Source: Amphiscolops sp. MND2022
Lineage: Eukaryota
Length of the DNA: 64,000 nucleotides
Direction: 5' to 3'
Assembly (NCBI GenBank): GCA_964187785.1
Contig: OZ076410.1
Coordinates: 42,966,001 to 43,030,000 of the forward strand
This document shows positions 14,507 to 64,000 of the stretch, piece after piece. The stretch's first letter is position 1. Each line of letters begins with the position of its first letter. The notes below the pieces were generated by a model. The model was given only the letters and a program-made list of their open reading frames with translations, ran no database searches and was not told the DNA's origin. The translations under genes and the position numbers were made by a program.

Positions 14507-16093
14507 TGTCGCATATATTAATCTGAATAAATTTCAAAATGATTCCCCAAAAAAGTAAAAAGCTATATCGAATTCGTTTGCAGACCACGAGTTGTGTAAT
14601 TTGAAACAACATCAAGTGTTGTACTTTGTATATTTTTAAAGCTTGAAAGCGCTCCTCACCTCATGAAAACCTGGACCGTCTTTTCCCGCTACTTCTTCCC
14701 CGCGAACCCGGCTGTCTTATCGCACGCCTCACTCCTTGAGGCTGATATTGCGCACCCAGGTGCTGAACGCGCTCTTCCTCGAGCTCCTCGACCTTCAGTG
14801 TGGTGGTCATCAAAGCCGCTGGCCCTGGTCCCGTCAGTACACAGTGTGCAGTCAAGGAGGAAAACAGGACCACATCACCGGGCTCCTGGATGCAGTACGC
14901 TATATGTTCCTGGATTTGCAGCGAGTCATCCCGGAGCGTACTAGGCAGGGAACGATGCCTTTCCAACGGAGGCACGATGCGTTTCCTGCAGAGGGTCTTC
15001 ACCTCGCGTGTGCGAGTGGTGAAGAACCACAACTTCCTCCCCCTTTCCAGCTGGCTGACAATGCTTCCTTCCGGGTTGGAGTCTATGTGTCAACCACTCC
15101 ATGCCCAACCACCACTTGCAAGGAGTGAGACGTGCTCGATGGAGTGCCCGCCAATATCTTGGACAACCTCCACATACTGTTCTTCTTGCGGGTCTGGGTA
15201 TAGGGCCTCATATCGCCAGGGAGCCTCTGGAAGACCATCGAAAGCAGCGTCCTTCATCTGTGTGCACTTGAAGGTTGCCAGAAGTTGCTTCTCACTACGG
15301 AAACAAATAGCAACTCTCCTCGCTGCTCCGTTGGTGTAACGCAGCACAGGATTGCCACGTATAATAATGGGGATGTTCTGTTTCCTCAAGAAGTCTGTTA
15401 TGCCCCCTCCCTCACCCGAGTCAAAGGAAGCTTCCCCGACTCTAACTCCATTGTCAGGCTTAATGCAGCCTCAAGCTCATTCATCTCTAAAACAGCAAAC
15501 TTTACTCTTTCTTCATGTATATTTGTGGTTGATATTGTGATTTATAACTTTTAGTTGAAAACGAATTTTTGAGTTCATACAAGCTCACTGTGACAACGCG
15601 CTGAATGCAATCTTTGTTTGATTGACCATTCCTAACCCATTCATTCTCTTTGTTTTTGCTGAACACATGTTTTACGTTGCCTATTTGTTATATAGATCGA
15701 ATTGAACAAAGTGTTTTGCCAATGCATACAACATATTTGTTAGCCAAAAAGCGTGCAGTTACATAACTCCAATTGCATCATTTTGTGTCATTTGTGTCCA
15801 TTGACTGGTACATGAATTCTAAACATCGTGCTTCATCGTCAAAAACCTCACCCACCATGAATAGAGCTGTGAACTGTTTCGAACTGCCAAAACACGCAAA
15901 ACGCAATAATCTTTTAGTTTAATAAAGCTTTAAGGCTTCAACTCAGTTTTGTTCGAGTCTCTTCAGCAAAAATCATAGTCTTACTTCCTGATAGTGGTCA
16001 GGTGGTCCGCCATTCAAGAACCAAGGGCGAGACTACTTCGCAAGCTACAAGCAAAGCATTCTCGCAAACAACAGAGGGACATCGACGCGAACA
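14507..16093 (+). repeat. 5' LTR of BEL element (1587 bp)
   Basis: Starts TGTCGCATAT, ends GCGAACA, AATAAA near 15920; direct repeat of 21556-23167. Confidence 0.95.
14661..15484 (-). pseudogene. JmjC-domain gene in the 5' LTR (disrupted copy)
   Basis: Same protein as 21806-22558. 1-nt deletion in a C-run near 15403 and TGG->TGA just before HID. Retains the basic C-terminal tail GVRRAIRQPGSRGRSSGKRRSRFS. Confidence 0.85.
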
Positions 16094-16095
16094 TT

Positions 16096-16113
16096 TGGTC
16101 CGCCGACCCGGAT
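16096..16113 (+). promoter_or_regulatory. Primer binding site of BEL element (18 nt, tRNA-Tyr-like)
   Basis: TGGTCCGCCGACCCGGAT 2 nt after the LTR CA; resembles the common BEL PBS TGGTCCTTCGAGCCGGAT. The tRNA identity is inferred. Confidence 0.8.
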
Positions 16114-17534
16114 ATGGCTGAGTCAGGAACAAACAACTGGGCGGAAGATGTTCGCAAACTAGTGTGAGGGCAGGACACAAGGCTGCTTTCACAAAATACG
16201 AGACCAGAGTTGATGACCTCGTAGCAGATCACGCAATTACCAGTGAGAAGCTCTGTGAAGCGGAGGCGCTGTTTTCTACGTTGCAGAACATGTACAAAAC
16301 AATTCTCAGATGGGACGCAGAGATCGAGCTCTATATTGAAGACGATGCCAAGCTGGCACAAGAACGGGAGGCATTCTCAGATTACGAGACTAGGATGAAC
16401 ATCGCCATGGCTCGTCTCAGTGCACTAATTGACAACATCAAGACCCAGTTGAAGGCGGGACTTACAGCAACCGCATCAACCTTATCAAGCCTGCCGACTA
16501 CAGGACACATGCGTCTGCCGAAGCTCCAAATGCCAACTTTCACTGGAGCCTATACCGATTGGGTATCTTTCAGCGATCTCTTCCAAGCAGCAATGGGCTC
16601 AAGCAGTCTTTTATCTGACTCTGAGAGACTAAATTACCTGAAAGCCTGCATAAAGGGTGATGCTGCGAAAATAATCAGCTCACTTAGAATCACAGATGCC
16701 AATTACCTCATTGCGTGGCAGCTACTAAAGGACAGATACGACAACACACGAAGTATAGTGCACGCTCATTTGCAAGCCATTTGGTCTCAGTCGTCAATGA
16801 AGGTAGAATCTGGGTCTGGCCTCAGGAAACTACACGAAACCACCAATGAGCACCTGAGGGCATTAGAAGCTTTAGGTCGACCAGTGAACCAATGGAGTGC
16901 TGTATTAGTTTTTTGCATCGCCGACAAGCTCGAAGCAGAATCACGAAAACAATGGCAGCTCAAACATCCGGGCAAAAATGTCCTTCGCTGGGACGATTTA
17001 TCCAAGTTCTTTGATGAAAGAAGCAGGGCATTAGAGAGTGGTGCAATCAAAGTGATTCCCCAAGCCAGCAAGATGAGCTATCAACGTGAGCCTCGGCATC
17101 AGCCTTATGCAGCTTCAATGGCGTGTAGTGAAAAATGTGACGTTGAACACAAACACCATGCGGGTCCAAAATTCAAGAAGATGTCAACGTCCCAGAAGTA
17201 CGACTTGGTGAAGAAGAAGAAGCGTGCTTGTTTCAATTGTTTGCAGACTGGGCACAGTGTCAGCGAATGTGTTTCTAAATTCAGCTGCAGGGAGTGCAAG
17301 GCCAAACACCACACTCTACTTTACCGACCAAAGCCTGCGACAACTTTACATGGCGGGTCAAACAAGACAATAGCGAGGGTGTCAATTTCTGTCAACACAA
17401 CAATTCAGTCTGGCGGTTCAGCAGGTCAGCAAGCCGATACTTCTGTCTTGACTGAGCATTGCGGGTCTGGATCTCCAAATGCCGGTGCTCTACTTCCAAC
17501 GGCAGTGGTACCCATCCACAATAAATCAGATTGA
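16114..17534 (+). pseudogene. gag: BEL gag (DUF1759-type capsid plus Cys/His knuckles)
   Basis: RLPKLQMPTFTGAYTDWVSFSDLF; LNYLKACIKGDAAKII; CFNCLQTGHSVSECVSKFSCRECKAKHHTLL. Frameshift near the start and a stop at 17534. Confidence 0.92.
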
Positions 17535-20500
17535 AAGGGTACATCTACGAGCCTTGTTAGATTCCGGATCACAGGTTAGCTTCATTACAGAGGCAAAAGC
17601 GAAGGCACTAATGTTGAAATTGCAAAAAAACCGTCAACCATCATAACTCTGGGTGCTTCTAGCTCACAAAAGACATGCGGCGTGTTACCAGCCACGATTT
17701 CAGGTTCGATAGACGTTAACTTTCACGTGATCCCTAAGATAACTGGTTCACTGCCTTGTGCAATTGTGGATATCTCCCAGATGCGTCACGTAGATCATCT
17801 GAAGCTGGCTGATCCCAGTTTCACTCTACCTGGCAAAATTGACATGCTTCTGGGAGCCGACATCATTGAAGATCTAATGCTGGACAATCGAATCAGGGAC
17901 AATGGTCTCATCCTTCGAGAGTCACTCCTGGGCTGGATTGTTTCGGGTTCAATTTTGGAGACGAGTGGTGTAATCTCGACTCTTCATGTGACAGTGGCAA
18001 GCGATGGGGAGTCAAATAAGTTACTAGCGAGATTCTGGGAACTAGAGAGTGTACCAGAAAAGAAGCACCGCACGATGGAAGAGGCTCATTGCGAAGAACA
18101 TTTTGATGCAACAACCACAAGAGACTCAACCGGAAGGTTCTATGTGAGGTTACCTTTCAAGGCAGACGGTCACTTGCTGGGTCAGAGCCGAGCTTCTGCA
18201 ATGAGACGATTCATCAATCTGGAAAACAAACTGAAACGTGACAACTTGCTTAAAGTCAGGTATTCTGATTTTGTTAATGAATTTTTGAAACTGGGTCATC
18301 TAGAGAAGGTACCTGATGGAGAGTTGGACAATTTAAACCACTACTACATGCCCCATCATTGTGTATTAAAAAATGCCAGTACAACGACAAAGCTGCGGGT
18401 GGTCTTTGATGCTAGTGCCAAGACAGCAACAGGTCTTTTGCTAAATGACTGCTTGATGGTGGGCCCGAAACTGCAACACGACCTATTCAGCATTTTGATA
18501 CGATTCCGATTCTTCAAGGTTGCGTTGTCGGCAGACGTTGCCAAGATGTATCGACAGGTTGGTCTAGACCCCAGAGACAGGGACTTCATGCGAGTCCTCT
18601 GGCGATTCAGTGAAGACGAGCCTGTACAGACTTTTCGTTTGACGCGTGTGATTTACGGGGTAGCAAGTTCCTCTTATCACTCAATCAGATGCTTGAGGGA
18701 AGCAGCCCAGCTTGATGGTGTACCAAAGGCAGCCAAAGAAGCAATTCTACGTGATTTTTATATGGACATCATTTTGACAGGAGCTAGTAGCATTGAGGAA
18801 GCTGAGCAGCTTCTCAATGATTTGATACAAACTCTTGAACGAGTTCAATTTGATCTGAAAAAATGGACCAGCAATGTTCCTTCTCTTGTCTTAGCACTTC
18901 CCGCAGAGTATAGTGAAGCAAATGAAAACCTCAAGTTTCTTCATCCAACTCATACCACAAAAACATTGGGCGTCACTTGGAACCCTTTTGATGATTTGTT
19001 CTCGCTTGAGGTAGCTCACATCTCTGATGACATCAATGACGATGGAATGACAAAAAGACGAATGCTTAGTGACATCGCCAAAACTTTTGATCCTCTGGGC
19101 TGGTTGTCTCCGGTGACAATGCTACTGAAGAGCATGATGCAAAGGGCCTGGCAAACAAATGTCGACTGGGATCAGAAACTGCCAACCGAGATTGATATGA
19201 GCTATCGCACCTGGCGGAAGAATCTACACAGTTTAAAAGAGATCAAGTTGCAACGCTTTGTTCTGAGCGAAGAACAGCAAGAACCTTTCGAATTACATGT
19301 CTTCTGCGATGCCTCAGAGAAGGCATATGCAGGCTGTGTATACGTGGTCTCCACCAATAATCGAGGTGAGAGGAATTCCAATCTACTTGTGGCAAAATGC
19401 AAAGTCTCTCCACTGAAAACACAATCTATTCCTCGCTTGGAATTGTGCGCCGTGCTTCTCGGATCTCGTCTGGTGTCATTAGTCATTCAGGCACTTGAGC
19501 GAATTTCTGTCAACATACGTGCAACAACGGGCTGGAGTGATTCCACAATTGTTCTCTGGCTTTCTCAAGAACCAGGTAACTGGCCAACGTTTGTGGCGAA
19601 CAGAGTTGCCGAAATACAGCGCAATGACCGTGTTCATTGGCAACACGTACCCACAAAGGACAATCCAGCTGATGCAGCGTCTCGTGGTGTTGAGCGAAGT
19701 GTACTAAAGAGCCTGGAAATTTGTTGGAAGGGACCAACTTGGTTACGTAGTGGAGTGCTAGCGTCACAACCGAAACCAAACTTCACTGAAGATGAAGCAA
19801 AAAGGCCAGAGCGACAGATCCTACACCCTAGAGCGGCTAAAAGGACTCCCTTGGCAAGAGTGGTAAGAACAGTGCCATCAGTGTCCCTTGCAGTTACAAA
19901 GGTTGACAACTATGCAGGTGACATCTTTGACCTTTCGCTGTTCAGCTCTCTGTCAAAGCTTCTCAGGGTAGTGGCGTATTTCAAACGATTTATACAACGC
20001 ATTCGTAACTGAGGCACCAAGGGATCATTAGGCACCATCTCACCTGATGAAATGACGGAAGCGATGATGATTCTTCTACGGCAAGAACAAAAGAAGGTTT
20101 ATTCCGACGAAATGAAAACCTTGGAGACCATGCCTCAGGTAAAATCGACAAGCAAAATCCTAAAATTGTACCCATTTTTATTCAAGGGAGTCCTTTGTGC
20201 TGGTGGTCGTCTTGCCCACGCCAATTTACCAGACGAGGCTAAATATCAGCGATTAGTTCCGAAGGAAAGCAGACCCGCTACGCTTGTCATTAAAAAAGCT
20301 CATCTGGATACGCTACATGGGGGCCCCAAACAAGTGATGGCTCAGATCAGATCAAATTTTTGGATACCCAACAACCGTAGTGTTGTGAGACTAGAACTTC
20401 AGCAGTGCGTGAAATGCAGCAGGTTCACAACCAAGCTGAGTGCGCCGCTTATGGGAGACCTCCCTAAGGAACGCATTGACGTCCCAACCAGAGCCTTTGA

Positions 20501-21420
20501 AAACGTGGGGCTAGACTTTGCAGGACCTTTTCTATGCAAACCAAGCAGCAAGGCCAGAAGTCAGGACAAAGCCTACATGGCTTTGTTTGTTTGTTTCGCC
20601 AGTAAAGCTGTCAACATTGAGTGTGTATCCGATATGGCCACTTTGGGGTGTATGGCAGCAATACGACGTTTTATATCTCGAAGAAGTTGTCCCAGTCAAG
20701 TATTCTCTGACAACGGAACCAACTTTGTTGGCGCAGCCAACGCGATTCAGCAATTGCAAAAGGTTCTATCCAACAAGCATGACAACTCGCTGCAATCCCA
20801 ATCTAGTGCTATTGGCATTCGATGGAACTTCATACCCCCAAGCGCTCCTCATTTCGGAGGTTTATGGGAAGCGGCAGCGAAAAGTGCGAAGAAACACTTA
20901 GGCAGAACAATGAGCAACAGTGTCCTGACATTTGAGGAGTTGACAACTCTTTTTTGTCAGATCGAGGCAGTGCTAAACTCGCGCCCAATCAGTGTAATGT
21001 CCGATGATCCCTATGAAGTTGAACCACTTACATCAGCACATCTTTCAATTGGACACAAACTAGAAGTGATACCTTGTTTTTTTATTGGACCAAACCCATG
21101 ACATGGACAATTGCAGTCCCTCAAAACGATGGTATCACATTCAGAACATTCTGTTGCATTTCTGGAACAGATGGACCAAAGAATACGTAACCACATTACA
21201 GAAAAGAAGCAAATGGAGACGAGGAACAAGCAATTTGAAAGTGGGCGTTTTAGTTTTCAACACCGATGACAATTCAGCACCTCTACAATGGCCAATTGAT
21301 TGCGTCCATTACGTCTACAGTGGACCTGATGATGCCGTCAGAGTAGTCAAGGTGAAAACTCCAACTGGAATATACAATCGGTCTGTTCACAAGTTGAAAA
21401 AACTACCTATTGATACATAA
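17535..21420 (+). pseudogene. pol: BEL pol (protease, RT, RNase H, integrase, C-terminal DUF5641-like domain)
   Basis: RALLDSGSQVSFIT; LRVVFDASAK, ADVAKMYRQV, FYMDI; LHVFCDASEKAYAGCVY; LDFAGPF, FSDNGTNFVGA, PHFGGLWE; FWNRWTKEYVTTLQKRSKW. A few stops and frameshifts. Confidence 0.95.
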
Positions 21421-21555
21421 CCTCCTCAATCTTTATTGAAACACACTGTAATCAGCTGTTTGTTAATGCCCTTTCATTGTCAACTCCTTTGATGCTATAT
21501 TTGTACGTCATGTAACTTTTTTGATTTGCGCCACGCAAAATCAAGGCGGGCGGTA

Positions 21556-23167
21556 TGTCGCATATATTAATCTGAATAAGTTTCAAAATGATTCCCCAAA
21601 AAAGTAAACAGAGTTATCGAATTCGTTTGCAGACCACGAGTTGTGTAGTTTGAAACAACATCAAGTGAAATAGTTTTGAAGAATTGTGTTTTTGTACTTT
21701 GTATATTTTTAAAGCTTGAAAGCGCTCCTCACCTCATGAAAACCTGGACTGTCTTTTCCCCCTACTTCTTCCCCGGGAACCCGGCTGTCTTATCGCACGC
21801 CTCACTCATTGAGGCTGATATTGCGCACCCAGGTGCTGAACGCGCTCTTCCCTGGCCTCCTCGACCTTCAGTGTGGTGGTCATCAAAGCTGCTGGCCCTG
21901 GTCCCGTCAATACACAGTGTGCAGTCAAGGAGGAAAACAGGACCACATCACCGGGCTCCTGGATGCAGTACGCTATATGTTCCCGGAATTGCAGCAAGTC
22001 ATCCCGGAGCGTACCAGGCAGGGAACGATGCCTTTCCAACGGAAGCACGATGCGTTTCCTGCAGAGGGTCTTCACCTCGCGTGTGCGAGTGGTGAAGAAC
22101 CACAACTTCCTCCCCCTTTCCAGCTGGCCGGCAATGCTTCCTCCCGGGTTGGAGTCTATGTGCCAACCACTCCATGCCCAACCACCACTTGCAAGGAGTG
22201 AGACGTGCTCGATGGAGTGCCCGCCAATATCTTGGACAACCTCCACATACTGTTCTCCTAGCGGGTCTGGGTATAGGGCCTCATATCGCCAGGGAGCCTC
22301 TGGAAGACCATCGAAAGCAGCATCCTTCATCCGTGTGCCCTTGAAGGCTGCAAGAAGTTGCTTCTCACTACGGAAACAAACAGCAACCCTCCTCGCTGCT
22401 CCGTTGGTGTAACGCAGCACAGGATTGCCACGTGTAAAAATGGAGATGTTCTGTTTCCTCAAGAAATCTGTTATGCCCCCCTCCCTCACCCGAGTCAAAA
22501 GAAGCCTCCCCGACTCTAACTCCATTGCCAGGCTTAATGCAGCCTCAGGCTCATTCATCTCTAAAATTGCAAACTTTACTCTTTCTTCATGTTTTTTGTG
22601 GTTGATATTGTGATTTATAACTTTTAGTTGGAAACGAATTTTTGAGTTCGTACAAGCTCACTGTGACAACGCGCTGAAAGCTATCTTTGTTTGATTGACC
22701 TTTCCCAACCCCATTCATTCTCATTGCTTTTGCTGAATACATGTTTTACGTTGCCTATTTGTTGTATAGACCGAATTGAACAAGGTGTTTTGCCAATGCA
22801 TACAACATATTTGTTAGCCGAAAAGCGTGCAGTTACATAACTCCAATTGCATCATACTGTGTCATTTGTGTCCATTGACTGGTACATGAATTCTAAACAT
22901 CGTGCTTCATTGTCAAAAACCTCACCCACCATGATGAGAGCTGTGAACAGTCTTGAACTGCAAAAACATGCAAAACGCAATAATCTTTTAGTTTAATAAA
23001 GCTTTAAGGCTTCAACTCAGTTTTGTTCGAGTCTCTTCAGCAAAAATCATAGTCTTACTTACTGATAGTGGTCAGGTGGTCCGCCATTCAAGAACGAAGG
23101 GCGAGACTACTTGGCAAGCTACAAGCAAAGCATTCTGGCAAACAACAGAGGGACATCGGCGGGAACA
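21556..23167 (+). repeat. 3' LTR of BEL element (1612 bp)
   Basis: Follows PPT AAGGCGGGCGGTA; TGTCGCATAT...GGGAACA. Confidence 0.95.
21806..22558 (-). CDS. JmjC/cupin Fe(II)-2-oxoglutarate oxygenase encoded antisense within the BEL 3' LTR (250 aa open; ~24 C-terminal codons cut by GGA->TGA)
   Basis: SGWHIDSNPGGSIAGQLERGRKLWFF (HxD at 22154-22162; GxKxW lysine) and CIQEPGDVVLFSSLTAHCVLT (distal His at 21917-21919) match the JmjC consensus. Confidence 0.85.
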   Translation of the reverse strand: MNEPEAALSLAMELESGRLLLTRVREGGITDFLRKQNISIFTRGNPVLRYTNGAARRVAVCFRSEKQLLAAFKGTRMKDAAFDGLPEAPWRYEALYPDPLGEQYVEVVQDIGGHSIEHVSLLASGGWAWSGWHIDSNPGGSIAGQLERGRKLWFFTTRTREVKTLCRKRIVLPLERHRSLPGTLRDDLLQFREHIAYCIQEPGDVVLFSSLTAHCVLTGPGPAALMTTTLKVEEAREERVQHLGAQYQPQ

Positions 23168-39343: not shown

Positions 39344-41032
39344 TGTCGTAACCAGATTCATCGTCACTTTGTTGAGAATCAACAGAATTCTCTCTACAGT
39401 AGTTTGTTTGGTTACTTTTGATCGATATTAACCTCGGAAACTCATTCTGAGCATCCTGGGACAATTTATTAGCATTTTCTGGATGCAGTCTATTTGACCG
39501 AAAGTCCTTCTGAGAATTTTCTTGGGCTGCATTATCTTGATGCAGTCCGTCTGACCGAAGGTCCAAACTTGTATTTTTTGCTGAATTCTGTCTCCTAACA
39601 GCATTTTTGTTGCTGGGCAACACTCTAGTGTCAATTGAAGTGTTTATAACGTCCAATATCTGGGAATTTAAGCTAGATTGCATTTCTTCAAATTTCCTTG
39701 ACATCTGTGACGAAATTTCTGAGCTAATAGCTCTTCTAGTTTCAACAGTCAAACAACTATTTTCACTCAGATTAGTATTCAAGTAAGACCTGGAGTCACT
39801 CTCATTTTGATTAGCATTTTCCTCATGTCTAGTTGACCTTAAGTCAATTTCTCCTTCATCATTCTCATTTTGAGCTAGGGAGATATCTCTCTGATAACTC
39901 CCTAACATCACATCTAATTTCTCAATGTCTGACATTATGTCAGATTGTCTCGAACGCCTTTCCTTTGCTTTCTGTTTCCTAGTAGAAGGCATAATCAAGA
40001 ATTATTCAAACTGAAGAAATGAATTGACTTGACAATTTGATATATCAAACTCAATGAAATGAAATGAGATTAAACAGAGTCTAAATTTTGTAAAAAATAT
40101 AAGATCAGTTTCGACAAATAGTCAATATTCGTGATAGCAGTTTCGTTGTGGTTGGGAGGTTCGTAGTAGCATTTGTGTCCCTTGACCTTTGGTTTGCTCC
40201 TAATTATAGTCTGATTGGGGTGACAGACGAAATTGTGAGTGTCACGTTACTAAATTTAGAACAATTTGTTACTGAAAATAGCTCCATCCGGGTTTCATCA
40301 TCATGACGTATTTACCACAAAATACATCAAAGGCACGATGGTGGACCAGGCGGCACAACTGATTATCAACTTTACATCTTGGATTAGTCTAGTTTCATGT
40401 TAAAATTGAACCGCAACACTACATGTAATTGTTACATGTAATACAAAATTGGTATTTGACTTAGTGTCAACGTGACTGCATCAAGTGATTATTAATACAA
40501 GTACAACCTGAAGTGGACGTAACGTACTATTAACTGCAATAGTGTACTAATTAGGTTAGCACCCAAACTAATTGTTTATCGGATTGACAACGCGTCAGCA
40601 GGACTGCATAGTTGTACCTGTTGAACGCACTTCTAATTCAACAATTGAATGTGCAATTCATACCGACTAAATGACGACTAAGTTTATATATTGGGCAGTA
40701 CAACACTAAAGCGCAAAGATTTACCAAAATCTAGAATAATAACTAACACAATATTTCATGTAACATCACTACGGCATTAATATTAAGGTACTGGAATTTT
40801 TGGTGTGCAGTCAGTTTGACCTTGGGTCAAAGTTTGCAAATGTTGAGTTTATTCATATAGCCACTGGAGTTCAATTAAGTTTCGTACACTGGATTCAGGG
40901 CCATCAGACTAAACGTCAAATGGTCACATTAGGACTTGCATCAGACAGGTAGGACTCCGGGTGCAGATAGATGCTCGAAACCTTCCGCCATTATTTGATA
41001 CAGGTTGCCGTCACAAGCGGCAGCTTGCGACA
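39344..41032 (-). repeat. 3' LTR of gypsy B (1689 bp), contains the Gag N-terminal ORF
   Basis: Highly similar direct repeat of 48690-50377; ORF MPSTRKQKAKERRSRQSDIMSDIE...ESGYD. Confidence 0.95.
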
Positions 41033-48613: not shown

Positions 48614-49344
48614 AGTACTCTTTCTACTTTAGGTACGATTGCATGATGTATCTTCGGATGCGTGGGTTCGAATCCCACTCCTGTCACCATGTCGTAACCA
48701 GATTCATTGTCACTTTGTTGAGAATCAACAGAATTCTCTCTACAGTAGTTTGTTTGGTTACTTTTGATCAATATTAACCTCGGAAACTCATTCTGAGCAT
48801 CCTGGGACAATTTATTAGCATTTTCTGGATGCAGTCTATTTGACCAAAAGTCCTGTTGAGAATTTTCTTGGGCTGCATTATCTTGATGCAGTCCGTCTGA
48901 CCGAAGGTCCAAACTTGTATTTTTTGCTGAATTCTGTCTCCTAACAGCATTTTTGATGCTGGGCAACACTCTAGTGTCAATTGCAGTGTTTAGAACGTCC
49001 AATATCTGGGAATTTAAGCTAAATTGCATTTCTTCAAATTTCCTTGACATCTGTGACGAAATTTCTGAGCTAATAGCTCTACTAGTTTCAACAGTCAAAC
49101 AACTATTTTCACTCAGATTAGTATTCAAGTAAGACCTGTAGTCACTCTCATTTTGATTTGCATTTTCCTCATGTCTAGTTGACCTTAAGTCAATTTCTCC
49201 TTCATCATTCTCATTTTGAGCTAGGGAGTTATCTCTCTGATAACTCCCTAACATCACATCTAAGTTCTCAATGTCTGACATTATGTCAGATTGTCTCGAA
49301 CGCCTTTCTTTTGCTTTCTGTTTCCTAGTAGAAGGCATAATCAA
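48610..49344 (-). CDS. gag: Gag N-terminal ORF initiating inside the 5' LTR and reading through the PBS (244 aa, truncated by the internal deletion)
   Basis: MPSTRKQKAK...ESGYD|MVTGVGFEPTHPK crosses the LTR/PBS junction in frame. Confidence 0.7.
   Translation of the reverse strand: MIMPSTRKQKAKERRSRQSDIMSDIENLDVMLGSYQRDNSLAQNENDEGEIDLRSTRHEENANQNESDYRSYLNTNLSENSCLTVETSRAISSEISSQMSRKFEEMQFSLNSQILDVLNTAIDTRVLPSIKNAVRRQNSAKNTSLDLRSDGLHQDNAAQENSQQDFWSNRLHPENANKLSQDAQNEFPRLILIKSNQTNYCRENSVDSQQSDNESGYDMVTGVGFEPTHPKIHHAIVPKVERVL
48648..48689 (+). tRNA. 42-nt 3' fragment of a tRNA-Leu including CCA, serving as an extended PBS of gypsy B (not a tRNA gene)
   Basis: GTATC-TTCG-GATGC variable-arm hairpin + GTGGGTTCGAATCCCAC T-arm + TCCTGTCA + CCA, abutting the LTR. 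No 5' half upstream. Confidence 0.8.
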
Positions 49345-50377
49345 GAATTATTCAAACTGAAGAAATGAATTGACTTGACAATTTGATATATCAAACTCAA
49401 TGAAATGAAATGAGATTAAACAGAGTCTAAATATTGTGAACAATATAAGATCAGTTTCGACAAATAGTCAAGATTCGTGATAGCAGTTTCGTTGTGGTTG
49501 TGAGGTTCGTAGTAGCATTTGTGTCCCTTGATCTTTGGTTTGCTCCTATTTATAGTCTGATTGGGGTGACAGACGAAATTGTGAGTGTCACGTTACTAAA
49601 TTTAGACCAATTTGTTACTAAAAATAGCTCCATCAGGGTTTCATCATCATGACGTATTTACCACAAAATATATCAAAGGCACGATGGTGGACCAGGCGGC
49701 ACATCTGATTATCAACTTTACATCTTGGAGTAGTCTAGTTTCATGTTAAAATTGAACAGCAACACTACTTGTAATTGTTACATGTAATACAAAATTGGTT
49801 ATTGACTTAGTGTCAACGTGACTGCATCAAGTGATTATTATTACAAGTACAACCTGAAGTGGACGTAACGTCCTATTAACTGCAATAGTGTACTAATTAG
49901 GTTAGCACCCAAACTAATTGTTTATCGGATTGACAACGCGTCAGCAGGACTGCATAGTTGTACCTGTTGAACGCACTTCTAATTCAACAATTGAATGTAC
50001 AATTCATACCGACTAAATGACGACTAAGTTTATATATTGGGCAGTACAACACTAAATCACAAAGATTTACTAACATCTACAATAATAACTAACACAATAT
50101 TTCATGTAACATCACTACGGCATTAATATTAAGGTATTTGAACTTTTGGTGTGCAGTCAGTTTGACCTTGGGTCAAAGTTTGCAAATGTTGAGTTTATTC
50201 ATATAGCCACTGAACTTCAATTAAGTTTCGTACACTAGATTCAGGGCCATCAGACTAAACGTCAAATGGTCACATTAGGACTTGCATCAGACAGGTAGGA
50301 CTCCGGGTGCAGGTAGATGCTCGTAACCTTCCGCCATTATTTGATACAGGTTGCGTCACAAGCGGCAGCTTGCGACA
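48690..50377 (-). repeat. 5' LTR of gypsy B (1688 bp)
   Basis: TGTCGCAAG...TTACGACA on minus, directly followed by TGGTGACAGGAG. Confidence 0.95.
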
Positions 50378-52975: not shown

Positions 52976-54513
52976 TGTGATAATCCTCTTCATCGAATTT
53001 TTCGTTCGAGAGTATAGTTACGTCTACGTCCGATTCATTTTGAAATATTGGTATAGCAGGATATTTCAATTCTTTCATTTTTGAGGATCTAAGAGGATAA
53101 TCGTCGTTTTCAGAATCTGAGTTTTCGTTATTAGATGCGCGAATTCCTATAGACTTATTTGTTTTGGATCGCGACGGCTGTGGGTCTTTGATTTCGTTGA
53201 TTTCTGGGCTTGGGTTTGTTACAGATGATGCACTTTTGTTGGACTTTATTTCCTTTAAAATTGTTTCAAGTTTATTTTTCATGACTTCTCTCATCTTTTC
53301 AATCCTATCATTATTCTTTTGTTCCATGATCTGGGTCCATCCTTGAAATTCGTTACTTATCTGACTGGGTTCAGTTAGTTGTCTTCACCTAAACTTCCTT
53401 GAACTACAGTATAAATAATAGTTAAAGTCTCATTACCTGCAATGGGCGTTCCTACTTGAATTACTTCAACATCTCTATCTGGGGAAGGAATTTCCAATCT
53501 TCTAGCTAGAACGTCTATTACGTCTGTTTCTCATATTGCTTCGAGTGAAAAATAGTTTCTGTCTGGCTTTTGGGGATAAATTTGATTTATCTTGTTTGTT
53601 CAAAAGAACAAGATTTGAGGGTATCACAATGTTACCAAAAAGTTTACAGTTGTATGAAGGAAACAACTGCACTATCTGATAGTTGAGATTTGAATGAATC
53701 TCTCTCTCAGTTTACAATAAAACAAATCCAAAAAATACCATGGATTTTTACCAATAACACTTTTTTTACCATAGTCATTGTTTGAAAAAGACAAAAATAG
53801 AATTACGTCAAGATAACGTCATATTATTTATAGCATCAACTCAATTACACCACGTTCGAAATATGCCTAAAGAAAAGACTAGAGAAACCCTAGGAATTAC
53901 CTAGAATATAGTATAGAATGTATTTGGGATGGTTTCCAAATAGCACTAGTTCACATATTCACGTTATCTAGTTGATCCTGCTGGAAACGCATAGTGACGA
54001 GTATGCGTCACTACTCATTCCGCAGGATGCCGCATAGTGTCTCTGTAAAAAGCGTATAGTGACGAGTATGCGTCACACCTTGGAACGTGTAATGCCGCAT
54101 AATGGTGTCGACAAATCCGCATGGTGACGAATATACGTCACTCCTCGATCCGCATGGTACCGCATAGTGGTACCAAGCTAAGATGCAATTTACTATATGG
54201 GGACGATTTCAAATGTATTAAAGCTTCCAAGGTGTTTCATTTGAGAATAGGGTGACTTGTTGTGTGGGTGAATAAGGGCTCTCAATGAAGTTTTAATGTC
54301 CAATAGCAACATGGGAAAAAAGTGTCATTCAAGGCAATATATCATATTTACATGACTTCTTGAAAAACTAACAGAAAAACAAAACAAAATGTTAGTTCGT
54401 TGGCTTAAAGTTTTGATTCACATTCTAGCTTAGAGAGTTTGTTGTTGCTGCCATCTTGCTTGGCTTTGGTCACTGATGCGCCACGGCGTCCACGCATCTT
54501 CTGGGTTGCGACA
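52976..54513 (-). repeat. 3' LTR of gypsy C (1538 bp)
   Basis: TGTCGCAAC...TATCACA on minus; direct repeat of 62345-63846. Confidence 0.93.
53989..54141. promoter_or_regulatory. U3 array of three GCATAGTGACGAGTATGCGTCAC-like palindromic motifs
   Basis: Each unit has GTGACG-N6-CGTCAC inverted repeats; two units remain in the 5' LTR (~63365-63455). Function is inferred. Confidence 0.6.
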
Positions 54514-55223
54514 GTCCTGCATTCTTAAAGGCAAACAGGGCAGACTCAAACCCATCGATGAACGCCTGGGACCGCTCATTTTGGTCCCTAACTGTCTCAG
54601 CATCATACGCCGTCGTCAGAAGATATTCACCAATTCGGTCTCCAAGCCGATTTGGTCATAAGTACGAGCACACCAGTTGCAAAATCATGCGATGTTCGGC
54701 ATCACGGTGGGTGACAACCTGTATAGATATCTTTCATTTGAGGGTAACAAGAGCACATTGGTGCTATGAGTAGTCTGCATGTAAAACACTGGCTGTGGCT
54801 GTGGCATTGGCTGAGCTGGAACTTCCGCGAAGCTGGGATATTTGGCGGGATCCGAGTCAACATGGGTGCAGGGTCATTAACATTGACCGTCGGCATGATC
54901 GGATTGGTGATTGGTATTCCAACTTGAGTGCTGCTGTACCCATTGTTTAAGTTATCCGCTCGTATCTCTTGCATATTATCTCCTCTTACCGTGAAATGGC
55001 TTGATTCTGTTGAAAACTCGTGCGGATAGGTTCGTATTGGGCGTAAGACCAGACCCCTACCTCGGCCTCTTCCTCTTGGGGTTGGTAAGATTGAAGCGGA
55101 AGGCCTAACATAGCTGTTTAATGAGTGGCTGTCTTCCATTTCCTGGTCATCAGGCGATCGCATCACGGGTTTTATCAACAACAGGTTATAAACAACTTCC
55201 ATAAAAGGTGTTTCACTTAACAC
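54473..55223 (-). pseudogene. 3' accessory ORF of gypsy C (P/R-rich then Cys-rich), running into the 3' LTR
   Basis: ORF 54702-55223 plus frameshifted continuation CNWCARTYDQIGLETEL/YLLTTAYDAETVRDQNERSQAFIDGFESALFAFKNAGLSQ. Confidence 0.65.
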
Positions 55224-55634: not shown

Positions 55635-56098
55635 GTGCAAGTTCTACTGTGATATCATCTTTGAGGTTGATAGGAGTTGGCAGACTATGACTGTAAGCAG
55701 GTCTGTCATCATTCGGCGTTAGTTTCACTTTTAGTTCACGGTTTATGCCTATATTGAAACGATGTCTGGCAAAAATATCGTGGAATTCAATGAGATTCTC
55801 TTCAATTTGTTGTTGTTGGTCTGGGCTGAGCGTTGTGTCGGACCAGTCGAAGTTTGAAAGGAATTCTTTCCGGGATGTGTCGTTATCATTTGGGTTCAGT
55901 TCCTCGAGTTCTATTAGTTCGAAAAGCTCATCGTGGATACGTTGCTGAGTTTCGAATCTATATGTTGAGGGATCGCCTGGTTCTTCAAGGGTAGGGAACC
56001 AGTATGTTTCCTGCTCTGAATTTTGTGTGGTACTCTGAGAAACTCTTTTATGTAGACTTCTGTTGTATCCTCTTGTTGTATAATGAAAGATAGCAATG
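55635..56098 (-). pseudogene. pol: Third, truncated copy of the pre-RT/RT-start unit
   Basis: KLTPNDDRPAYSHSLPTPINLKDDI repeated a third time, then an abrupt switch to unrelated sequence. Confidence 0.85.
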
Positions 56099-58117
56099 TC
56101 ATAATTCTGCTCAAGGATCCTTGCGTTATCTTTAGAGTATCTTGAGCAGAAGGAGATCAGTCCTGATGTGGGTTTATGAAATTGCTGCAGCTCAGAAACA
56201 GCGTTTTCTTGGTCATTGTGTGTTTCGGTTTGTGCTTGATTCCTTATGTTTTGTTTTTCTTACTATAATTGACTATCATCAATTTCGTCATCTGGAAGAA
56301 CATGAATTTGTTCTTCCTCGACAATGCCTGATGATTGAATGTTCACTTCAATCGCTTTCGTGTGAATATCATTACGAAAGGCCATTTCCAGTTTTTCGGT
56401 TGGATCGATTTCTGTTCTAGATAAGAAGTCGGCAGCGGTGTTCATTGATCCAGCAACATGGGCGATCACGAAATTCTATTGTAGGACATAGTCGCAGGCA
56501 TTCCAGAGAGCTGGAGGGATCATTTTTGTTTGTAAGAAACGGATGACAGACCGGTTGTCTGTGAACACGATTACTGCGAAGGCGCTTCCCCACATGAGGT
56601 GCCCAATTTCAACAAATGCAAAGTATATGGAAAGAATTTCCTTTTCAAAAATTGACATTTTTGTCTGTGTTGGATTGAAAGTTTTCGAACCAAATGCTAC
56701 GAGTGCATAGGTTTTTCGTTTGGATTGAAGTTTTTGGTTCGGGTCGTCTTCAATCATGATAGCATATCCTGCTGCTGTGAAACTTGCATCGGACATTACT
56801 ATAAGTTGCTTGTTTTTTAGTGGTTTTTTTAAAACTAACTGGCAGGAATTTTCTAGGAGTTTGTTGAGGTTTGTGAAGGCTTCTACCGAATTTGTTAGTA
56901 CGTAGAATTTGGAGGTTTCTTTGAGGAGTTTGAAAAACGAAGAGAGCCGTTCTGAAAGGCGTGGTATGTAGTTTCGGTAACAGTTTAAAAATCCAATATA
57001 CCTCTGTAACGCCTTTTTTGATTTGGGAAAGCGATGTTTTGAGAGGAGGTCTTTCACTTTGTAGGCTTGAAGGGCGACTCCGTTTGGTGTTGTTGTGCGT
57101 ACCAGAAAGTCGACTTGTTTGACTCCAAAATGACATTTTGACATGGAGAGTTTTAATCCTGCCTTGCGTATGCATTCAAAGACAGTTTCGATATTTGTAC
57201 ACAATTGTTTTGTGTCAGTTGCGACTATGCCAATGTCATCGACAAATTGGAGGCATTGGTCTGCTTTAATTGCTCTGTCTAGGTACCCTCCCATAAAGCT
57301 TGAAAATGCAGAAAGTGATCTGCTGAGACCCTGAGCAAGCCGACGATAAGCAAATGTTCTACTTGCAAAGTTGAAAGCCAGCATTTGAATGGACTGGTAA
57401 TCTGCCATCTGATGGCAGTGGTAAGCCTGTGAGCAATCCAATTTGCAGGAAAGCTTTTTCCCTGCCATGTGTTGGGCTGCATCCGATATAGTGCTTACCG
57501 GGTGGTTGTTGTTTGTGTAATCTTCAGTGATGAAGTTGTTAATCTTCCGGAGGTCTACTAAAAGTCTGTGGCGCCCATTGGGTTTGCATTGTGCAAAAAT
57601 TGGGCTTGCATAATTGGAGAAAGGTACAGTTGTAATGATACCGTACTTGTGTATAAGTGCAAGTTCTACTATGATATCATCTTTGAGGTTGATAGGAGTT
57701 GGCAGACTTTGACTGTAAGCAGGTCTGTCATCATTCGGCGTTAGTTTCACTTTTAGTTCACGGTTTATGCCTATATCGAAACAATGTCTGGCAAAAATAT
57801 TGTGGAATTCAATGGGATTCTCTTCAATTTGTTGTTGTTCGTCTGGGCTGAGCGTTGTGTCGGACCAGTCGAAGTTTGAAAGGAGTTCTTTCCGGAATGT
57901 GTCGTTATCATTTGGGTTCAGTTCCTCGAGTTCTATTAGTTCGAAAAGCTCATTGTAGATACGTTGCTGAGTTTCGAATCTATATGTTGCGGGATCGCCT
58001 GGTTCTTCAAGGGTAGGGAACCAGTATGGTTCCTGCTCTGAATTTTGTGTGGTACTCTGAGAAATTCTTTTATGTAGACTTCTGTTGTATCCTCTTGTAT
58101 AATGAAAGATAGCAATG
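56099..58117 (-). pseudogene. pol: Second tandem RT-RNase H unit (~2.02 kb)
   Basis: ORF 56476-57750: YASPIFAQCKPNGRHRLLVDLRKIN, QFVDDIG, LIVMSDASFTAAG, VFTDNRSV; HVAGSMNTAADFLSR. Confidence 0.92.
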
Positions 58118-63021: not shown

Positions 63022-63846
63022 CTGCCCTATCTGACGGTTGAGATTTGAATGAATCTCTCTCTCAGTTTACAATAAAACAAATCCAAGAAATACCATAACA
63101 CTCCTTTTTTACCATAGTCATTAATGAAAAAGACAAAAAGAATTACGTCAAGATAACGTCATATTATTTATAGCACAACTCATTTACGCAACGTTCGAAG
63201 TATGGTTAAGGAAAAGACTAGAGAAACCCTGGGAATTACCTAGAATATAGTATAGAATGTATTTGGGATGTTTCCAAATAGCACTAGTTCACGTATTCAC
63301 GTTATATAGTTGGTCCTCCTGGAAACTACTCATTCAGCAGGATGCCGCATAGTGTCTCTGTAAAAAGCGTATAGTGACCAGTATGCGTCACACCTCGAAA
63401 CGTATTATGCCGCATAATGGCGTGGACAATTCCGCATGGTGACGAATATACGTCACTCATCGATCCGCATGGTGCCCCATAGTGGTACTAGTGGTACCAT
63501 GCTAAGATGAAATTTACTATATGGGGACGATTTCAAATGTTTTAAAGCTTCCAAGTTAAATCGTTTGAGACTAGGGCGACTCGTTGTGTGGGTGAATAAG
63601 TTCTCCCAATGAAGTTTTAATGTCCAATAGCAACATTGGAAAAAAGTTTCATTCAAGGCAAACATTATATAAATATCATATTTACATGACTTCTTGAAAA
63701 ACTAACAGAAAAACAAAACAAAATGCTAGTTCGTTGGCTTAAAGGTTTGATTCACATTGTAGCTTTGAGAATTGTTGTGGCTGTCATCTTGTTTGGCTTC
63801 GGTCACTGATGCGCCACGGCTCCCACGCAACTCCTGGGTTACGACA
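62345..63846 (-). repeat. 5' LTR of gypsy C (1502 bp)
   Basis: TGTCGTAAC start on minus, end TATCACT (CA mutated), immediately followed by the PBS. Confidence 0.93.
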
Positions 63847-64000
63847 GGTGTAATTCTACAAGATTTACCACCGGATTCCTACTGAATTTTCTTCGTTTTA
63901 TAAAAAATTACCCTGCATGCAGGCGTGCAGCATGTAAAAAGTTCAAGCAGATTCAACTAGGGCCAGTTGCATTACCTTGTTGTTATCATATTGCATTGAA

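What the first reader, a model, noticed from the sequence alone, without database searches (positions are those of the whole stretch)
21806..22558. A BEL/Pao retrotransposon carries a JmjC oxygenase (putative demethylase) gene antisense inside its LTR
Seen: a 250-aa ATG-initiated ORF on the minus strand lies wholly within the 5' half (U3 position) of the 1.6 kb BEL LTR and is present in both LTRs. It has H-I-D, G-R-K-L-W and QEPGD....AHCVLT. Known: HxD/E...H is the Fe(II) triad of JmjC 2-oxoglutarate oxygenases, and the GxKxW lysine binds 2-OG in the KDM2/KDM7/JMJD6 class. Inference: the element encodes its own chromatin (or RNA/protein) modifying enzyme from a divergent LTR promoter. Being in U3, the gene would be copied to both ends at every replication cycle. 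A basic tail in the 5' copy looks like an NLS. An eraser of repressive histone methylation would be a direct anti-silencing device, analogous in logic to VANC proteins of plant VANDAL DNA transposons. I do not know of a described JmjC-in-LTR BEL element but cannot search the literature.
Basis: partly seen in the sequence, partly recalled or inferred. Interest (0 to 1): 0.95.

Follow-up and report, generated by a model that had tools for sequence, protein, structure and literature searches.

The report
Retrotransposon LTR carrying a JmjC oxygenase gene
A jumping gene of the BEL/Pao type carries, backwards inside its terminal repeats, a small conserved gene for a JmjC iron/2-oxoglutarate enzyme, the enzyme class that includes histone demethylases; I found no earlier report of this, so it may be a new way for mobile DNA to alter its host's chromatin or proteins.

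Summary
The window has a BEL/Pao LTR retrotransposon: LTRs 14507-16093 and 21556-23167 (93.7% identical), with gag, Pao peptidase and integrase between them. The 250-aa minus-strand ORF 21806-22558 lies wholly inside the 3' LTR.

It is a real gene:
- A profile of 32 diverse relatives matches Pfam JmjC (20 of 32 members) and solved KDM7/PHF8 structures, aligning the HxD, Lys and His residues.
- An AlphaFold model (pLDDT 87.5) hits only JmjC-fold enzymes.
- Differences between the two LTRs of one element look neutral (57 non-synonymous : 16 synonymous). Differences fixed between elements show purifying selection (15:21, omega about 0.23, p=1e-5).

The window element is a dead copy. Its 3' copy has lost the basic tail to a premature stop, and its 5' copy has a frameshift and a stop. 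Intact 274-aa copies exist in both LTRs of a young element (L001).

A second BEL/Pao family (Pol 57% identical, JmjC 26%) has the same layout. Gypsy-like elements in another dataset carry a related JmjC internally, also antisense.

All relatives are unnamed, and no paper describing this was found. Histone demethylation as an anti-silencing device is plausible but untested; protein hydroxylation is a serious rival.

The parts
14507..16093 (+). 5' LTR of the BEL/Pao element (1587 bp; TG...CA ends)
   Evidence: blastn LTR pair, 93.7% identity; ends read
14661..15484 (-). Disrupted JmjC gene copy in the 5' LTR. It has a frameshift near codon 26 and an in-frame stop at codon 132, but keeps the basic C-terminal tail.
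   Evidence: tblastn with P0001; translation; alignment
16096..16113 (+). Primer-binding-site-like motif starting TGG, 2 nt after the 5' LTR
   Evidence: sequence read; assignment by inference
16164..17534 (+). gag ORF (DUF1759, the BEL/Pao gag-type domain)
   Evidence: E=7e-37
17682..21420 (+). pol, broken into three ORFs (17682-20012 with the Pao peptidase/RT region; 20052-21101 with the integrase zinc domain; 21085-21420 C-terminal part)
   Evidence: nearest named relatives are arthropod BEL/Pao pols at 37-42% identity
21537..21553 (+). Polypurine-tract-like sequence just upstream of the 3' LTR
   Evidence: sequence read; assignment by inference
21556..23167 (+). 3' LTR (1612 bp)
   Evidence: ends read
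21806..22558 (-). The JmjC ORF of the finding (250 aa + stop). H133-I-D135, K151 and H214 are intact; it is truncated by a premature stop at codon 251.
21734..21805 (-). Remainder of the ancestral reading frame after the premature stop: the 23-codon basic tail plus the original stop
   Evidence: translation of 274 codons; tail conserved in relatives
22614..22619 (-). TATAAA 61 nt upstream of the JmjC ATG, the candidate antisense core promoter; kept in 5 of 6 copies of the family
   Evidence: function inferred
22576..22590 (-). Four-codon upstream ORF in the JmjC leader, present in the related copies
22995..23000 (+). Sense-strand AATAAA 167 nt before the LTR end. It places R/U5 at the 3' end of the LTR and so places the JmjC gene in U3.
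   Evidence: assignment by inference
21432..21437 (-). AATAAA on the JmjC strand, 296 nt after the ancestral stop. It lies in the spacer between pol and the 3' LTR and is a candidate poly(A) signal for the 3'-LTR copy only.
   Evidence: function inferred

Best explanation
Shown: the ORF is a gene for a small (274 aa when intact), stand-alone JmjC-fold Fe(II)/2-oxoglutarate oxygenase. It is a long-standing accessory gene of a lineage of BEL/Pao LTR retrotransposons. It sits antisense in the U3 part of the LTR, so reverse transcription copies it to both ends of every new insertion.

Inferred: the sense genomic RNA carries the gene only as non-coding antisense sequence. The protein must therefore be made from integrated DNA, from the gene's own TATA promoter lying back-to-back with the sense promoter. 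The 3'-LTR copy has a downstream AATAAA just inside the element.

Inferred, and the least secure step: the conserved basic tail takes the protein to the nucleus. There it uses Fe(II) and 2OG to remove repressive lysine methylation (KDM7/PHF8-like: H3K9me, H3K27me or H4K20me) from chromatin over copies of the element, keeping them transcribable.

The window's own copy is a dead relic. The stated confidence is for the whole chain including demethylase anti-silencing. For the shown part alone (a selected, retrotransposon-borne JmjC oxygenase gene) my confidence is about 0.9.
For: JmjC identity:
- 32 relatives at 20-50% identity keep H133, G149, K151, H214 and V216 nearly invariant.
- Pfam JmjC is matched by 20 of 32 members, best E=3.6e-7. 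One relative passes the curated cut-off.
- The family profile hits solved ceKDM7A (2.7e-6), PHF8 (8e-6) and KDM7A (8e-4), with HxD, the Lys and the second His aligned.
- The AlphaFold2 model has pLDDT 87.5 and pTM 0.84. The top 50 Foldseek PDB hits are all JmjC-fold enzymes.

Part of the element:
- A young element, L001, has LTRs 99.4% identical, an intact 1386-aa pol, and intact 274-aa ORFs in both LTRs.
- A second BEL/Pao family, L012, has Pol 56.6% identical and JmjC 26% identical, with the same antisense-in-both-LTRs layout and an intact 1652-aa gag-pol.

Selection:
- LTR-versus-LTR differences within an element are 57 N: 16 S (omega about 1.15). Differences fixed between elements are 15 N: 21 S (omega about 0.23; binomial p=1.4e-5; Fisher p=2.4e-4).
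- The fixed differences fall 4/10/22 on codon positions 1/2/3.
- Distant homologues have saturated synonymous sites with dN of 0.46-0.63.

Promoter and terminator candidates. Basic tail conserved across clades.

The best sequence relatives (KDM7/PHF8) erase repressive marks, by established knowledge of that family. The fission-yeast JmjC protein Epe1 is a known anti-silencing factor (PMC7192584).
Against: - No enzymatic, localisation or transcript data exist. The host species is unknown.
- The protein has no PHD, chromo, CXXC or other reader domain to aim it at chromatin or at its own copies.
- The top structural matches are JmjC-only hydroxylases (JMJD6, JMJD5, FIH, JMJD7, TYW5) at the same E-values as KDM7/PHF8, with only moderate TM-scores of 0.4-0.56.
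- A diffusible enzyme acts in trans. It is unclear how selection would keep it intact in each element lineage without some family-specific targeting.
- No canonical poly(A) signal lies inside the LTR after the stop in the window family.
Confidence: 0.4

Rival explanations
1. The protein is a JmjC-only protein hydroxylase, like FIH, JMJD5, JMJD6 or JMJD7. It would modify a host protein (for example a splicing, translation or innate-defence factor) or one of the element's own proteins (Gag or integrase) to favour the element's replication. It would not act on histone methylation.
For: The size and architecture (274 aa, JmjC only, no reader domains) fit the hydroxylase group. The best Foldseek matches are JMJD6, JMJD5, FIH, JMJD7 and TYW5. 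JMJD6 also appears in the sequence-profile list at E=0.07. The catalytic residues shared with this group (Thr/Ser at H-3, and Lys 15-18 residues after the first His) are present.
Against: The significant sequence-profile matches are to KDM7/PHF8 demethylases, not hydroxylases. The conserved basic tail suggests a nuclear or nucleic-acid-bound location, though JMJD6 is also nuclear.
Confidence: 0.3
2. The enzyme acts on nucleic acid. It would oxidise a modified base in RNA or DNA, as the JmjC enzyme TYW5 does on tRNA: for instance on the element's RNA or cDNA, on the primer tRNA, or on host small RNAs.
For: TYW5 is among the structural matches. The Arg/Lys-rich tail conserved across clades could bind nucleic acid. 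Other retroelements have captured nucleic-acid modifiers such as DNMTs (PMC5890265).
Against: There is no specific sequence similarity to TYW5 (E=0.53). Most nucleic-acid oxidising 2OG enzymes are AlkB or TET/JBP, not JmjC.
Confidence: 0.1
3. The protein works without catalysis, as a scaffold that blocks heterochromatin proteins, as proposed for the JmjC protein Epe1.
For: Epe1 opposes heterochromatin non-enzymatically (PMC7192584).
Against: The metal and 2OG ligands are the most conserved columns of the whole family across 20-50% identity. That argues for retained catalysis.
Confidence: 0.07
4. The ORF is a passively captured fragment of a host gene, or a chance ORF, with no function for the element.
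For: Most copies, including both in the window, are damaged. The window copy alone is below Pfam's cut-off (18.1 versus 24 bits).
Against: Purifying selection acts in the replicating lineage. The same gene sits in the same position in a BEL/Pao family whose Pol is only 57% identical. Relatives occur in Gypsy-like elements. No long host protein appears among 73 representative hits.
Confidence: 0.03

Closest known systems
KDM7/PHF8/PHF2 (JHDM1-type) JmjC histone demethylases
   Same: They are the best sequence-profile matches among solved structures. HxD, the 2OG lysine in a G-x-K-(I/L)-(F/W) strand, and the distal His in a (A/G)-H-x-V-L-(T/S) strand all align. They share the JmjC double-stranded beta-helix fold.
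   Different: The matches are weak (E about 1e-6, roughly 12-14% identity in structure alignments). The TE protein has no PHD finger or other reader and is a third to a quarter of their size. Its substrate is unknown.
JmjC-only hydroxylases (JMJD6, JMJD5/KDM8, FIH, JMJD7, TYW5)
   Same: Stand-alone JmjC proteins of similar size. They are the top Foldseek matches, at E about 1e-7.
   Different: Sequence-profile similarity is not significant (JMJD6 E=0.07). These are host housekeeping genes, not carried by mobile elements.
Retrotransposons that captured epigenetic-machinery domains: DNMT-carrying retrotransposons of dinoflagellates and charophytes (PMC5890265); MBD-carrying Copia elements of arthropods (PMC6673714)
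   Same: A retroelement carries a chromatin or DNA-methylation-related module, kept under purifying selection across copies.
   Different: There the domain is fused in frame into Pol or Gag, in the sense orientation. Here it is a separate antisense gene with its own promoter, inside the LTR, and it belongs to a different enzyme class (JmjC oxygenase).
VANC anti-silencing proteins of Arabidopsis VANDAL DNA transposons (PMC5735166, PMC10398659)
   Same: An accessory, transposon-encoded protein thought to counteract epigenetic silencing of its own family. This is the same logic as the proposed mechanism.
   Different: VANC is a sequence-specific DNA-binding protein of a DNA transposon, not an enzyme. 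There is no homology, and anti-silencing is demonstrated there but only inferred here.
Retroviral genes in or read from the 3' LTR: MMTV sag (ORF in U3), HTLV-1 HBZ (antisense transcript started in the 3' LTR); cited from general knowledge, not checked here
   Same: These are precedents for a protein-coding gene lying in U3, and for antisense transcription from a 3' LTR giving an accessory protein.
   Different: sag is in the sense orientation. HBZ's coding sequence lies outside the LTR. Neither is an enzyme, and neither is in a BEL/Pao element.
TET/JBP 2OG dioxygenase genes linked to Kyakuja-Dileera-Zisupton DNA transposons in fungi (general knowledge, Iyer et al. 2014; not checked here); JmjC proteins of giant viruses and of Leptopilina boulardi filamentous virus
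   Same: Fe(II)/2OG dioxygenases carried by mobile or viral genomes.
   Different: A different dioxygenase family (TET/JBP) or a different kind of carrier (DNA transposons, large DNA viruses). None is a retroelement.

Membership tests
JmjC-domain Fe(II)/2OG oxygenases (Pfam PF02373, cupin/DSBH fold) | HxD/E...H metal-binding triad | tested here: met
   H133-I-D135 and H214 are present in the window ORF. H133 and H214 are at least 90% conserved across 32 relatives at 20-50% identity; one copy has HxE. They align to the triad of PHF8 and ceKDM7A.
JmjC-domain Fe(II)/2OG oxygenases (Pfam PF02373, cupin/DSBH fold) | 2-oxoglutarate-binding residues (Lys on the strand after the HxD, Thr/Ser three residues before the first His) | tested here: met
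   K151 is nearly invariant. Ser or Thr sits at H-3 (W-S/T-G-W-H). Both align with the T...K of PHF8.
JmjC-domain Fe(II)/2OG oxygenases (Pfam PF02373, cupin/DSBH fold) | Profile match at the curated threshold | tested here: inconclusive
   The window ORF scores 18.1 bits against a cut-off of 24 (E=0.004). At E<=0.01, 20 of 32 family members match, best 3.6e-7. The L007 relative scores 25.1 bits and passes.
JmjC-domain Fe(II)/2OG oxygenases (Pfam PF02373, cupin/DSBH fold) | Double-stranded beta-helix fold of JmjC type | tested here: met
   AF2 model with pLDDT 87.5 and pTM 0.84. All of the top 50 PDB matches are JmjC-fold enzymes, E 1e-7 to 2e-6, TM 0.39-0.56.
JmjC-domain Fe(II)/2OG oxygenases (Pfam PF02373, cupin/DSBH fold) | Fe(II)/2OG-dependent oxidation activity | not testable with these tools
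   Needs recombinant protein and assays.
KDM2/KDM7 (JHDM1/PHF2/PHF8) histone lysine demethylases | Closest sequence relatives are within this subfamily | tested here: inconclusive
   These are the best PDB profile hits (2.7e-6 to 8e-4). No phylogeny with all JmjC subfamilies was made, and the structure search does not prefer them.
KDM2/KDM7 (JHDM1/PHF2/PHF8) histone lysine demethylases | Accompanying reader or targeting domains (PHD, CXXC, F-box/LRR) | tested here: not met
   Only a JmjC match was found in 274 aa. The rest is an N-terminal extension of the fold and a basic tail.
KDM2/KDM7 (JHDM1/PHF2/PHF8) histone lysine demethylases | Demethylation of H3K9/K27/K36 or H4K20 methyl-lysine | not testable with these tools
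   Biochemical assay required.
JmjC-only protein/tRNA hydroxylases (FIH, JMJD5, JMJD6, JMJD7, TYW5) | Stand-alone JmjC domain protein of about 230-350 aa; closest structural neighbours | tested here: met
   274 aa with JmjC only. Ranks 1-23 of the Foldseek list are from this group. Their sequence-profile similarity is not significant.
BEL/Pao LTR retrotransposons | LTR pair flanking gag (DUF1759) and pol with the Pao-type peptidase/RT region and integrase, plus PBS and PPT | tested here: met
   Intact relatives are L001 and L012. The probable target-site duplication is imperfect (GATAGC versus GATGC).
BEL/Pao LTR retrotransposons | Usual architecture: LTRs of 0.2-1.2 kb and only gag-pol (rarely env) as coding content (PMC3118150) | tested here: not met
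   The LTRs are 1.6 kb (window, L001) and 1.9 kb (L012) because they contain an 0.8-kb gene.
Transposon-encoded anti-silencing factors (VANC type) | Demonstrated loss of repressive marks on the encoding family when the protein is expressed | not testable with these tools
   This is an analogy of logic only. There is no homology and no experiment.

The most novel reading that the evidence does not exclude
LTR retrotransposons of at least two superfamilies carry their own JmjC enzyme: BEL/Pao elements in U3, and Gypsy-like elements internally. This enzyme family is absent from the named-protein sources searched here (NCBI, UniRef). On the most novel reading it erases repressive histone methylation over the elements, which would make it the first enzymatic 'eraser' counter-defence known to be encoded by a retroelement in animals.
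Probability: 0.35. Interest if true: 0.95.

Novelty: new variant of a known kind. Interest (0 to 1): 0.85.

Why it matters
Hosts silence retrotransposons largely through repressive chromatin, using piRNA- or KRAB-guided H3K9 methylation. Known counter-measures encoded by transposons are few: VANC in plants, and captured DNMT or MBD domains.

An oxygenase of the histone-demethylase superfamily carried by retrotransposons would add a new class of weapon to the transposon-host arms race. It is kept by selection, duplicated with every LTR, and recurs in two superfamilies.

It also makes the question directly testable, because the protein is small and soluble-sized and has obvious catalytic-dead controls.

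Even if the substrate proves not to be a histone, this is a new, unnamed JmjC family and an unusual example of a full protein gene living inside a U3 region. It also shows that long LTRs deserve to be scanned for genes, since repeat masking hides them from annotation.

Tried and rejected
- A single-sequence search of PDB sequences found nothing. A profile of only close copies gave chance hits to DOCK proteins.
- The first AlphaFold run, on the shallow alignment A1, was useless (pLDDT 33). It became informative only with the diverse alignment A2.
- An Rfam scan of the window found nothing.
- Identifying the host failed. All JmjC relatives come from unnamed ENA/Logan assemblies. Sample accessions appear in no paper. 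The nearest named Pol proteins are arthropod BEL/Pao at only 37-42% identity.
- The short Logan and ENA contigs (L002, L005, L006, L008, L011) were inspected for poly(A) tails as a sign of mRNA. None was seen, and L002 starts with sequencing-adapter sequence, so they say nothing about transcription.
- L003 (a relative 27% identical, from the same sample) has no LTR and no recognisable neighbours, so its context is unresolved.
- L009 at first looked like the same LTR attached to a Gypsy pol. The junction shows it is a lone (solo or truncated) LTR next to an unrelated element.
- The long + strand ORFs overlapping the gene (179, 139 and 130 aa) were rejected as genes. The between-element substitutions fall on third positions of the minus-strand frame.
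- Simple pairwise dN/dS among close copies (0.3-1.3) mixes selection with post-insertion decay. It was replaced by the within-element versus between-element partition.
- The second LTR-like repeat pair in the window (39344-41032 / 48690-50377) carries a minus-strand ORF, but that ORF has no JmjC similarity.
Full report
**Observation**

The ORF at 21806..22558 on the minus strand (250 aa, ATG start) is exactly as described. blastn of the two flanking regions gives a single long direct repeat, 14507-16093 and 21556-23167, with 1615 aligned columns at 93.7% identity.

Between the repeats, on the + strand, lie:
- a gag ORF with DUF1759 (E=7e-37);
- an ORF with the Pao retrotransposon peptidase domain (E=2e-51);
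- an ORF with the integrase zinc domain.

The repeats start TG and end CA. A TGG-initiated primer-binding-like motif follows the 5' repeat, and a purine-rich tract precedes the 3' repeat. The probable 5-bp target duplication is imperfect (GATAGC versus GATGC). This is a BEL/Pao LTR retrotransposon, and the ORF occupies positions 251-1003 of the 1612-bp 3' LTR.

The element is old and dead. Its LTRs differ by 6.3% and pol is split into three ORFs. The 5'-LTR copy of the ORF has a frameshift near codon 26 and a stop at codon 132. The 3'-LTR copy ends at a premature stop that removes a 24-residue basic tail.

**Is it a JmjC protein?**

On its own the window ORF matches Pfam JmjC only weakly: 18.1 bits, E=0.004, below the cut-off of 24. 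It finds nothing in the PDB by sequence.

The large databases hold 28 close relatives. A profile search over 1.8 billion representatives gives 73 hits, all short (49-324 aa) and none a long host demethylase.

An alignment of 32 diverse members (20-50% identity, A2) has only a handful of nearly invariant columns: H133, G149, K151, H214 and V216. These are the HxD histidine, the lysine of G-x-K-L-W, and the distal histidine.

- Scanned one by one, 20 of the 32 match Pfam JmjC, best 3.6e-7. One relative passes the curated threshold.
- The family profile hits solved structures of C. elegans KDM7A (2.7e-6), human PHF8 (8e-6) and KDM7A (8e-4), then JMJD6 (0.07). The metal and 2OG ligands are aligned.
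- With A2 as input, AlphaFold2 gives a confident model (pLDDT 87.5, pTM 0.84). The shallow alignment had given pLDDT 33.
- Foldseek against the PDB returns JmjC-fold enzymes in all top 50 places: JMJD6, JMJD5, FIH, JMJD7, TYW5, KDM7A, PHF8 and PHF2 (E about 1e-7 to 2e-6, TM 0.39-0.56).

So the fold, and membership in the JmjC superfamily, are established. The subfamily, and with it the substrate, is not. Sequence leans to KDM7/PHF8, while structure and architecture lean equally to the JmjC-only hydroxylases.

**Does it belong to the element?**

- Locus L001 (ENA ERZ25074608) is a young copy of the same family. Its LTRs are 99.4% identical, it has an intact 1386-aa pol and a gag, and both LTRs hold an intact 274-aa ORF.
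- L009 is a lone LTR that still carries an intact ORF.
- L010 has two more copies.
- L012, from the same sample, is a different BEL/Pao family. Its gag-pol (1652 aa, intact) is 56.6% identical in Pol, and its LTRs are 1879 bp and 99.3% identical. Each LTR carries, antisense and at the same relative position, a JmjC gene only 26% identical to the window family's.

The arrangement is therefore old and conserved, not a one-off capture.

In a second dataset (ERZ26859043), three loci of two families (L007; L013 and L014) are Gypsy-like elements of 11.8-12.8 kb. They have a zinc-knuckle gag, aspartic protease, RT and Gypsy-type RNase H, and short LTRs. Each carries a single related JmjC gene internally, again antisense, just downstream of pol.

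In a maximum-likelihood tree the Gypsy-borne proteins form one clade (support 100/99). The two BEL-borne groups fall in two other well-supported clades.

**Selection**

Pairwise dN/dS among close copies ranges from 0.3 to 1.3, because it mixes evolution of the active lineage with decay after insertion. I separated the two.

| Class of difference | Non-synonymous : synonymous | Omega | Codon positions 1/2/3 |
|---|---|---|---|
| Between the two LTRs of one element (arisen after insertion) | 57 : 16 | about 1.15 | 30/22/21 |
| Both LTRs of one element agree, and differ from both LTRs of another (arisen in the replicating lineage) | 15 : 21 | about 0.23 | 4/10/22 |

The between-element figure departs from neutrality (binomial p=1.4e-5) and differs from the within-element class (Fisher p=2.4e-4). 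The codon-position counts are; the third-position excess identifies the minus-strand frame as the selected one.

Against the 45-52%-identical homologues from other datasets, synonymous sites are saturated while dN is 0.46-0.63.

**Anatomy of expression (inferred)**

- On the sense strand an AATAAA lies at 22995-23000, 167 nt before the LTR end. R/U5 is therefore the last part of the LTR, and the ORF lies in U3.
- On the JmjC strand a TATAAA lies 61 nt upstream of the ATG. It is kept in five of six copies of the family. A four-codon upstream ORF follows it.
- No canonical poly(A) signal follows the stop inside the LTR in this family. The first AATAAA lies just beyond the LTR edge, in the spacer between pol and the 3' LTR, in both the window and L001.
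- This suggests the 3'-LTR copy is the properly terminated transcription unit, while the 5'-LTR copy would read out into host DNA.

Because U3 is copied from the 3' end of the genomic RNA to both ends of the cDNA, the gene is inherited without lengthening the internal region. The genomic RNA contains it only as antisense sequence. An Arg/Lys-rich C-terminal tail is conserved in several clades, which fits nuclear import or nucleic-acid binding.

**Mechanism**

My best reading, at about 0.4 for the whole chain, is a nuclear Fe(II)/2OG enzyme that removes repressive lysine methylation from chromatin over copies of the element.

The main rival (0.3) is a protein hydroxylase acting on host or element proteins. 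Lesser rivals are nucleic-acid oxidation, a non-catalytic Epe1-like role, and a functionless capture. The last is largely excluded by the selection and conservation data.

One open problem applies to any trans-acting model: how selection keeps the gene intact in each lineage when there is no visible targeting domain.

**Comparison with what is known, and novelty**

- The BEL/Pao survey (PMC3118150) describes LTRs of 0.2-1.2 kb and gag-pol, rarely env, as coding content. It does not mention JmjC.
- Full-text searches combining JmjC with retrotransposon terms found no description of such an element. Nor do the papers on accessory domains (PMC6338049) or on DNMT capture (PMC5890265).
- The nearest precedents are retrotransposons that fused DNMT or MBD domains into their polyproteins (PMC5890265, PMC6673714), VANC anti-silencing proteins of plant DNA transposons (PMC5735166), and JmjC proteins of giant viruses and an insect filamentous virus.
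- From general knowledge, further precedents are MMTV sag in U3, HTLV-1 HBZ read antisense from the 3' LTR, and TET/JBP genes linked to fungal KDZ transposons.
- Every relative of the protein in the databases is unnamed, and none comes from NCBI or UniRef.

I rate this a new variant of a known kind: mobile elements carrying epigenetic-machinery genes. The limits of that judgement are that Repbase and subscription journals could not be searched, the host is unidentified, and there is no expression or biochemical evidence.

Noticed in passing
L009:1-4629: Two and a bit tandem copies (2.19-kb unit, 99.8% identical) of a circovirus-like unit, with gene calls hitting Circo_capsid and the RNA_helicase domain of Rep. 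They lie 2 kb from the lone JmjC-bearing LTR at the start of a 55-kb contig. This is either an integrated CRESS-DNA virus concatemer or an assembly join.
   Followed up: no
L007:5589-18390; L014:5275-17089; L013:4971-18060: Gypsy-like elements of 11.8-12.8 kb in another dataset carry a related JmjC gene internally and antisense. It lies between pol and a 4-kb 3' region with ORFs on the pol strand that match no Pfam family (possibly env-like or another accessory module).
   Followed up: partly
window 22559-22570; L012:9985-10000; L014:9985-10000; L002:215-233: In several divergent families the JmjC ATG is preceded within a few bases by a pyrimidine-rich stretch ending in AG. This looks like a splice acceptor, so the mRNA may have a 5'-UTR intron and a leader exon further upstream.
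   Followed up: no
window 39344-41032 and 48690-50377: A second long direct repeat pair (1689 bp, 97.1% identical). Each copy holds a 229-244-aa minus-strand ORF rich in Ser/Asn/Gln with no Pfam match and no similarity to the JmjC family. The 7.6 kb between them has ORFs without recognisable retroelement domains apart from a weak zinc-finger hit.
   Followed up: partly
window 55635-60142: A tandem duplication of about 2.0-2.5 kb (95.6% identity) gives two copies of a Gypsy-type RT/RNase H ORF (56476-57750 and 58741-59775, minus strand). This RT is 46% identical to the pol of the JmjC-bearing Gypsy-like element in L007. The region 56-62 kb also has unusually strong GC skew (0.18-0.24).
   Followed up: no
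window 53028-54514 and 62386-63847: Another direct repeat pair (about 1.5 kb, 86% identity) brackets the duplicated Gypsy-type RT region. These may be the old LTRs of that element.
   Followed up: no
L010:2733-13833: Two LTRs with the JmjC gene, each followed by the same stretch of internal BEL/Pao sequence (95.6% identity). This is an LTR-internal-LTR-internal tandem array, as produced by unequal recombination between elements. One JmjC copy is intact; the other has lost a codon and gained a late stop.
   Followed up: partly
L003:7218-8108: A JmjC relative (27% identical; P0049 clade) from the same sample as the window family sits in a 9.6-kb contig with no LTR pair and no retroelement domains nearby. 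It could be a decayed element, a different carrier, or a domesticated host copy.
   Followed up: partly
L002:1-22: The Logan contig holding the 45%-identical homologue begins with Illumina adapter sequence, so its 5' end is a library artefact and should not be read as a transcript start.
   Followed up: yes
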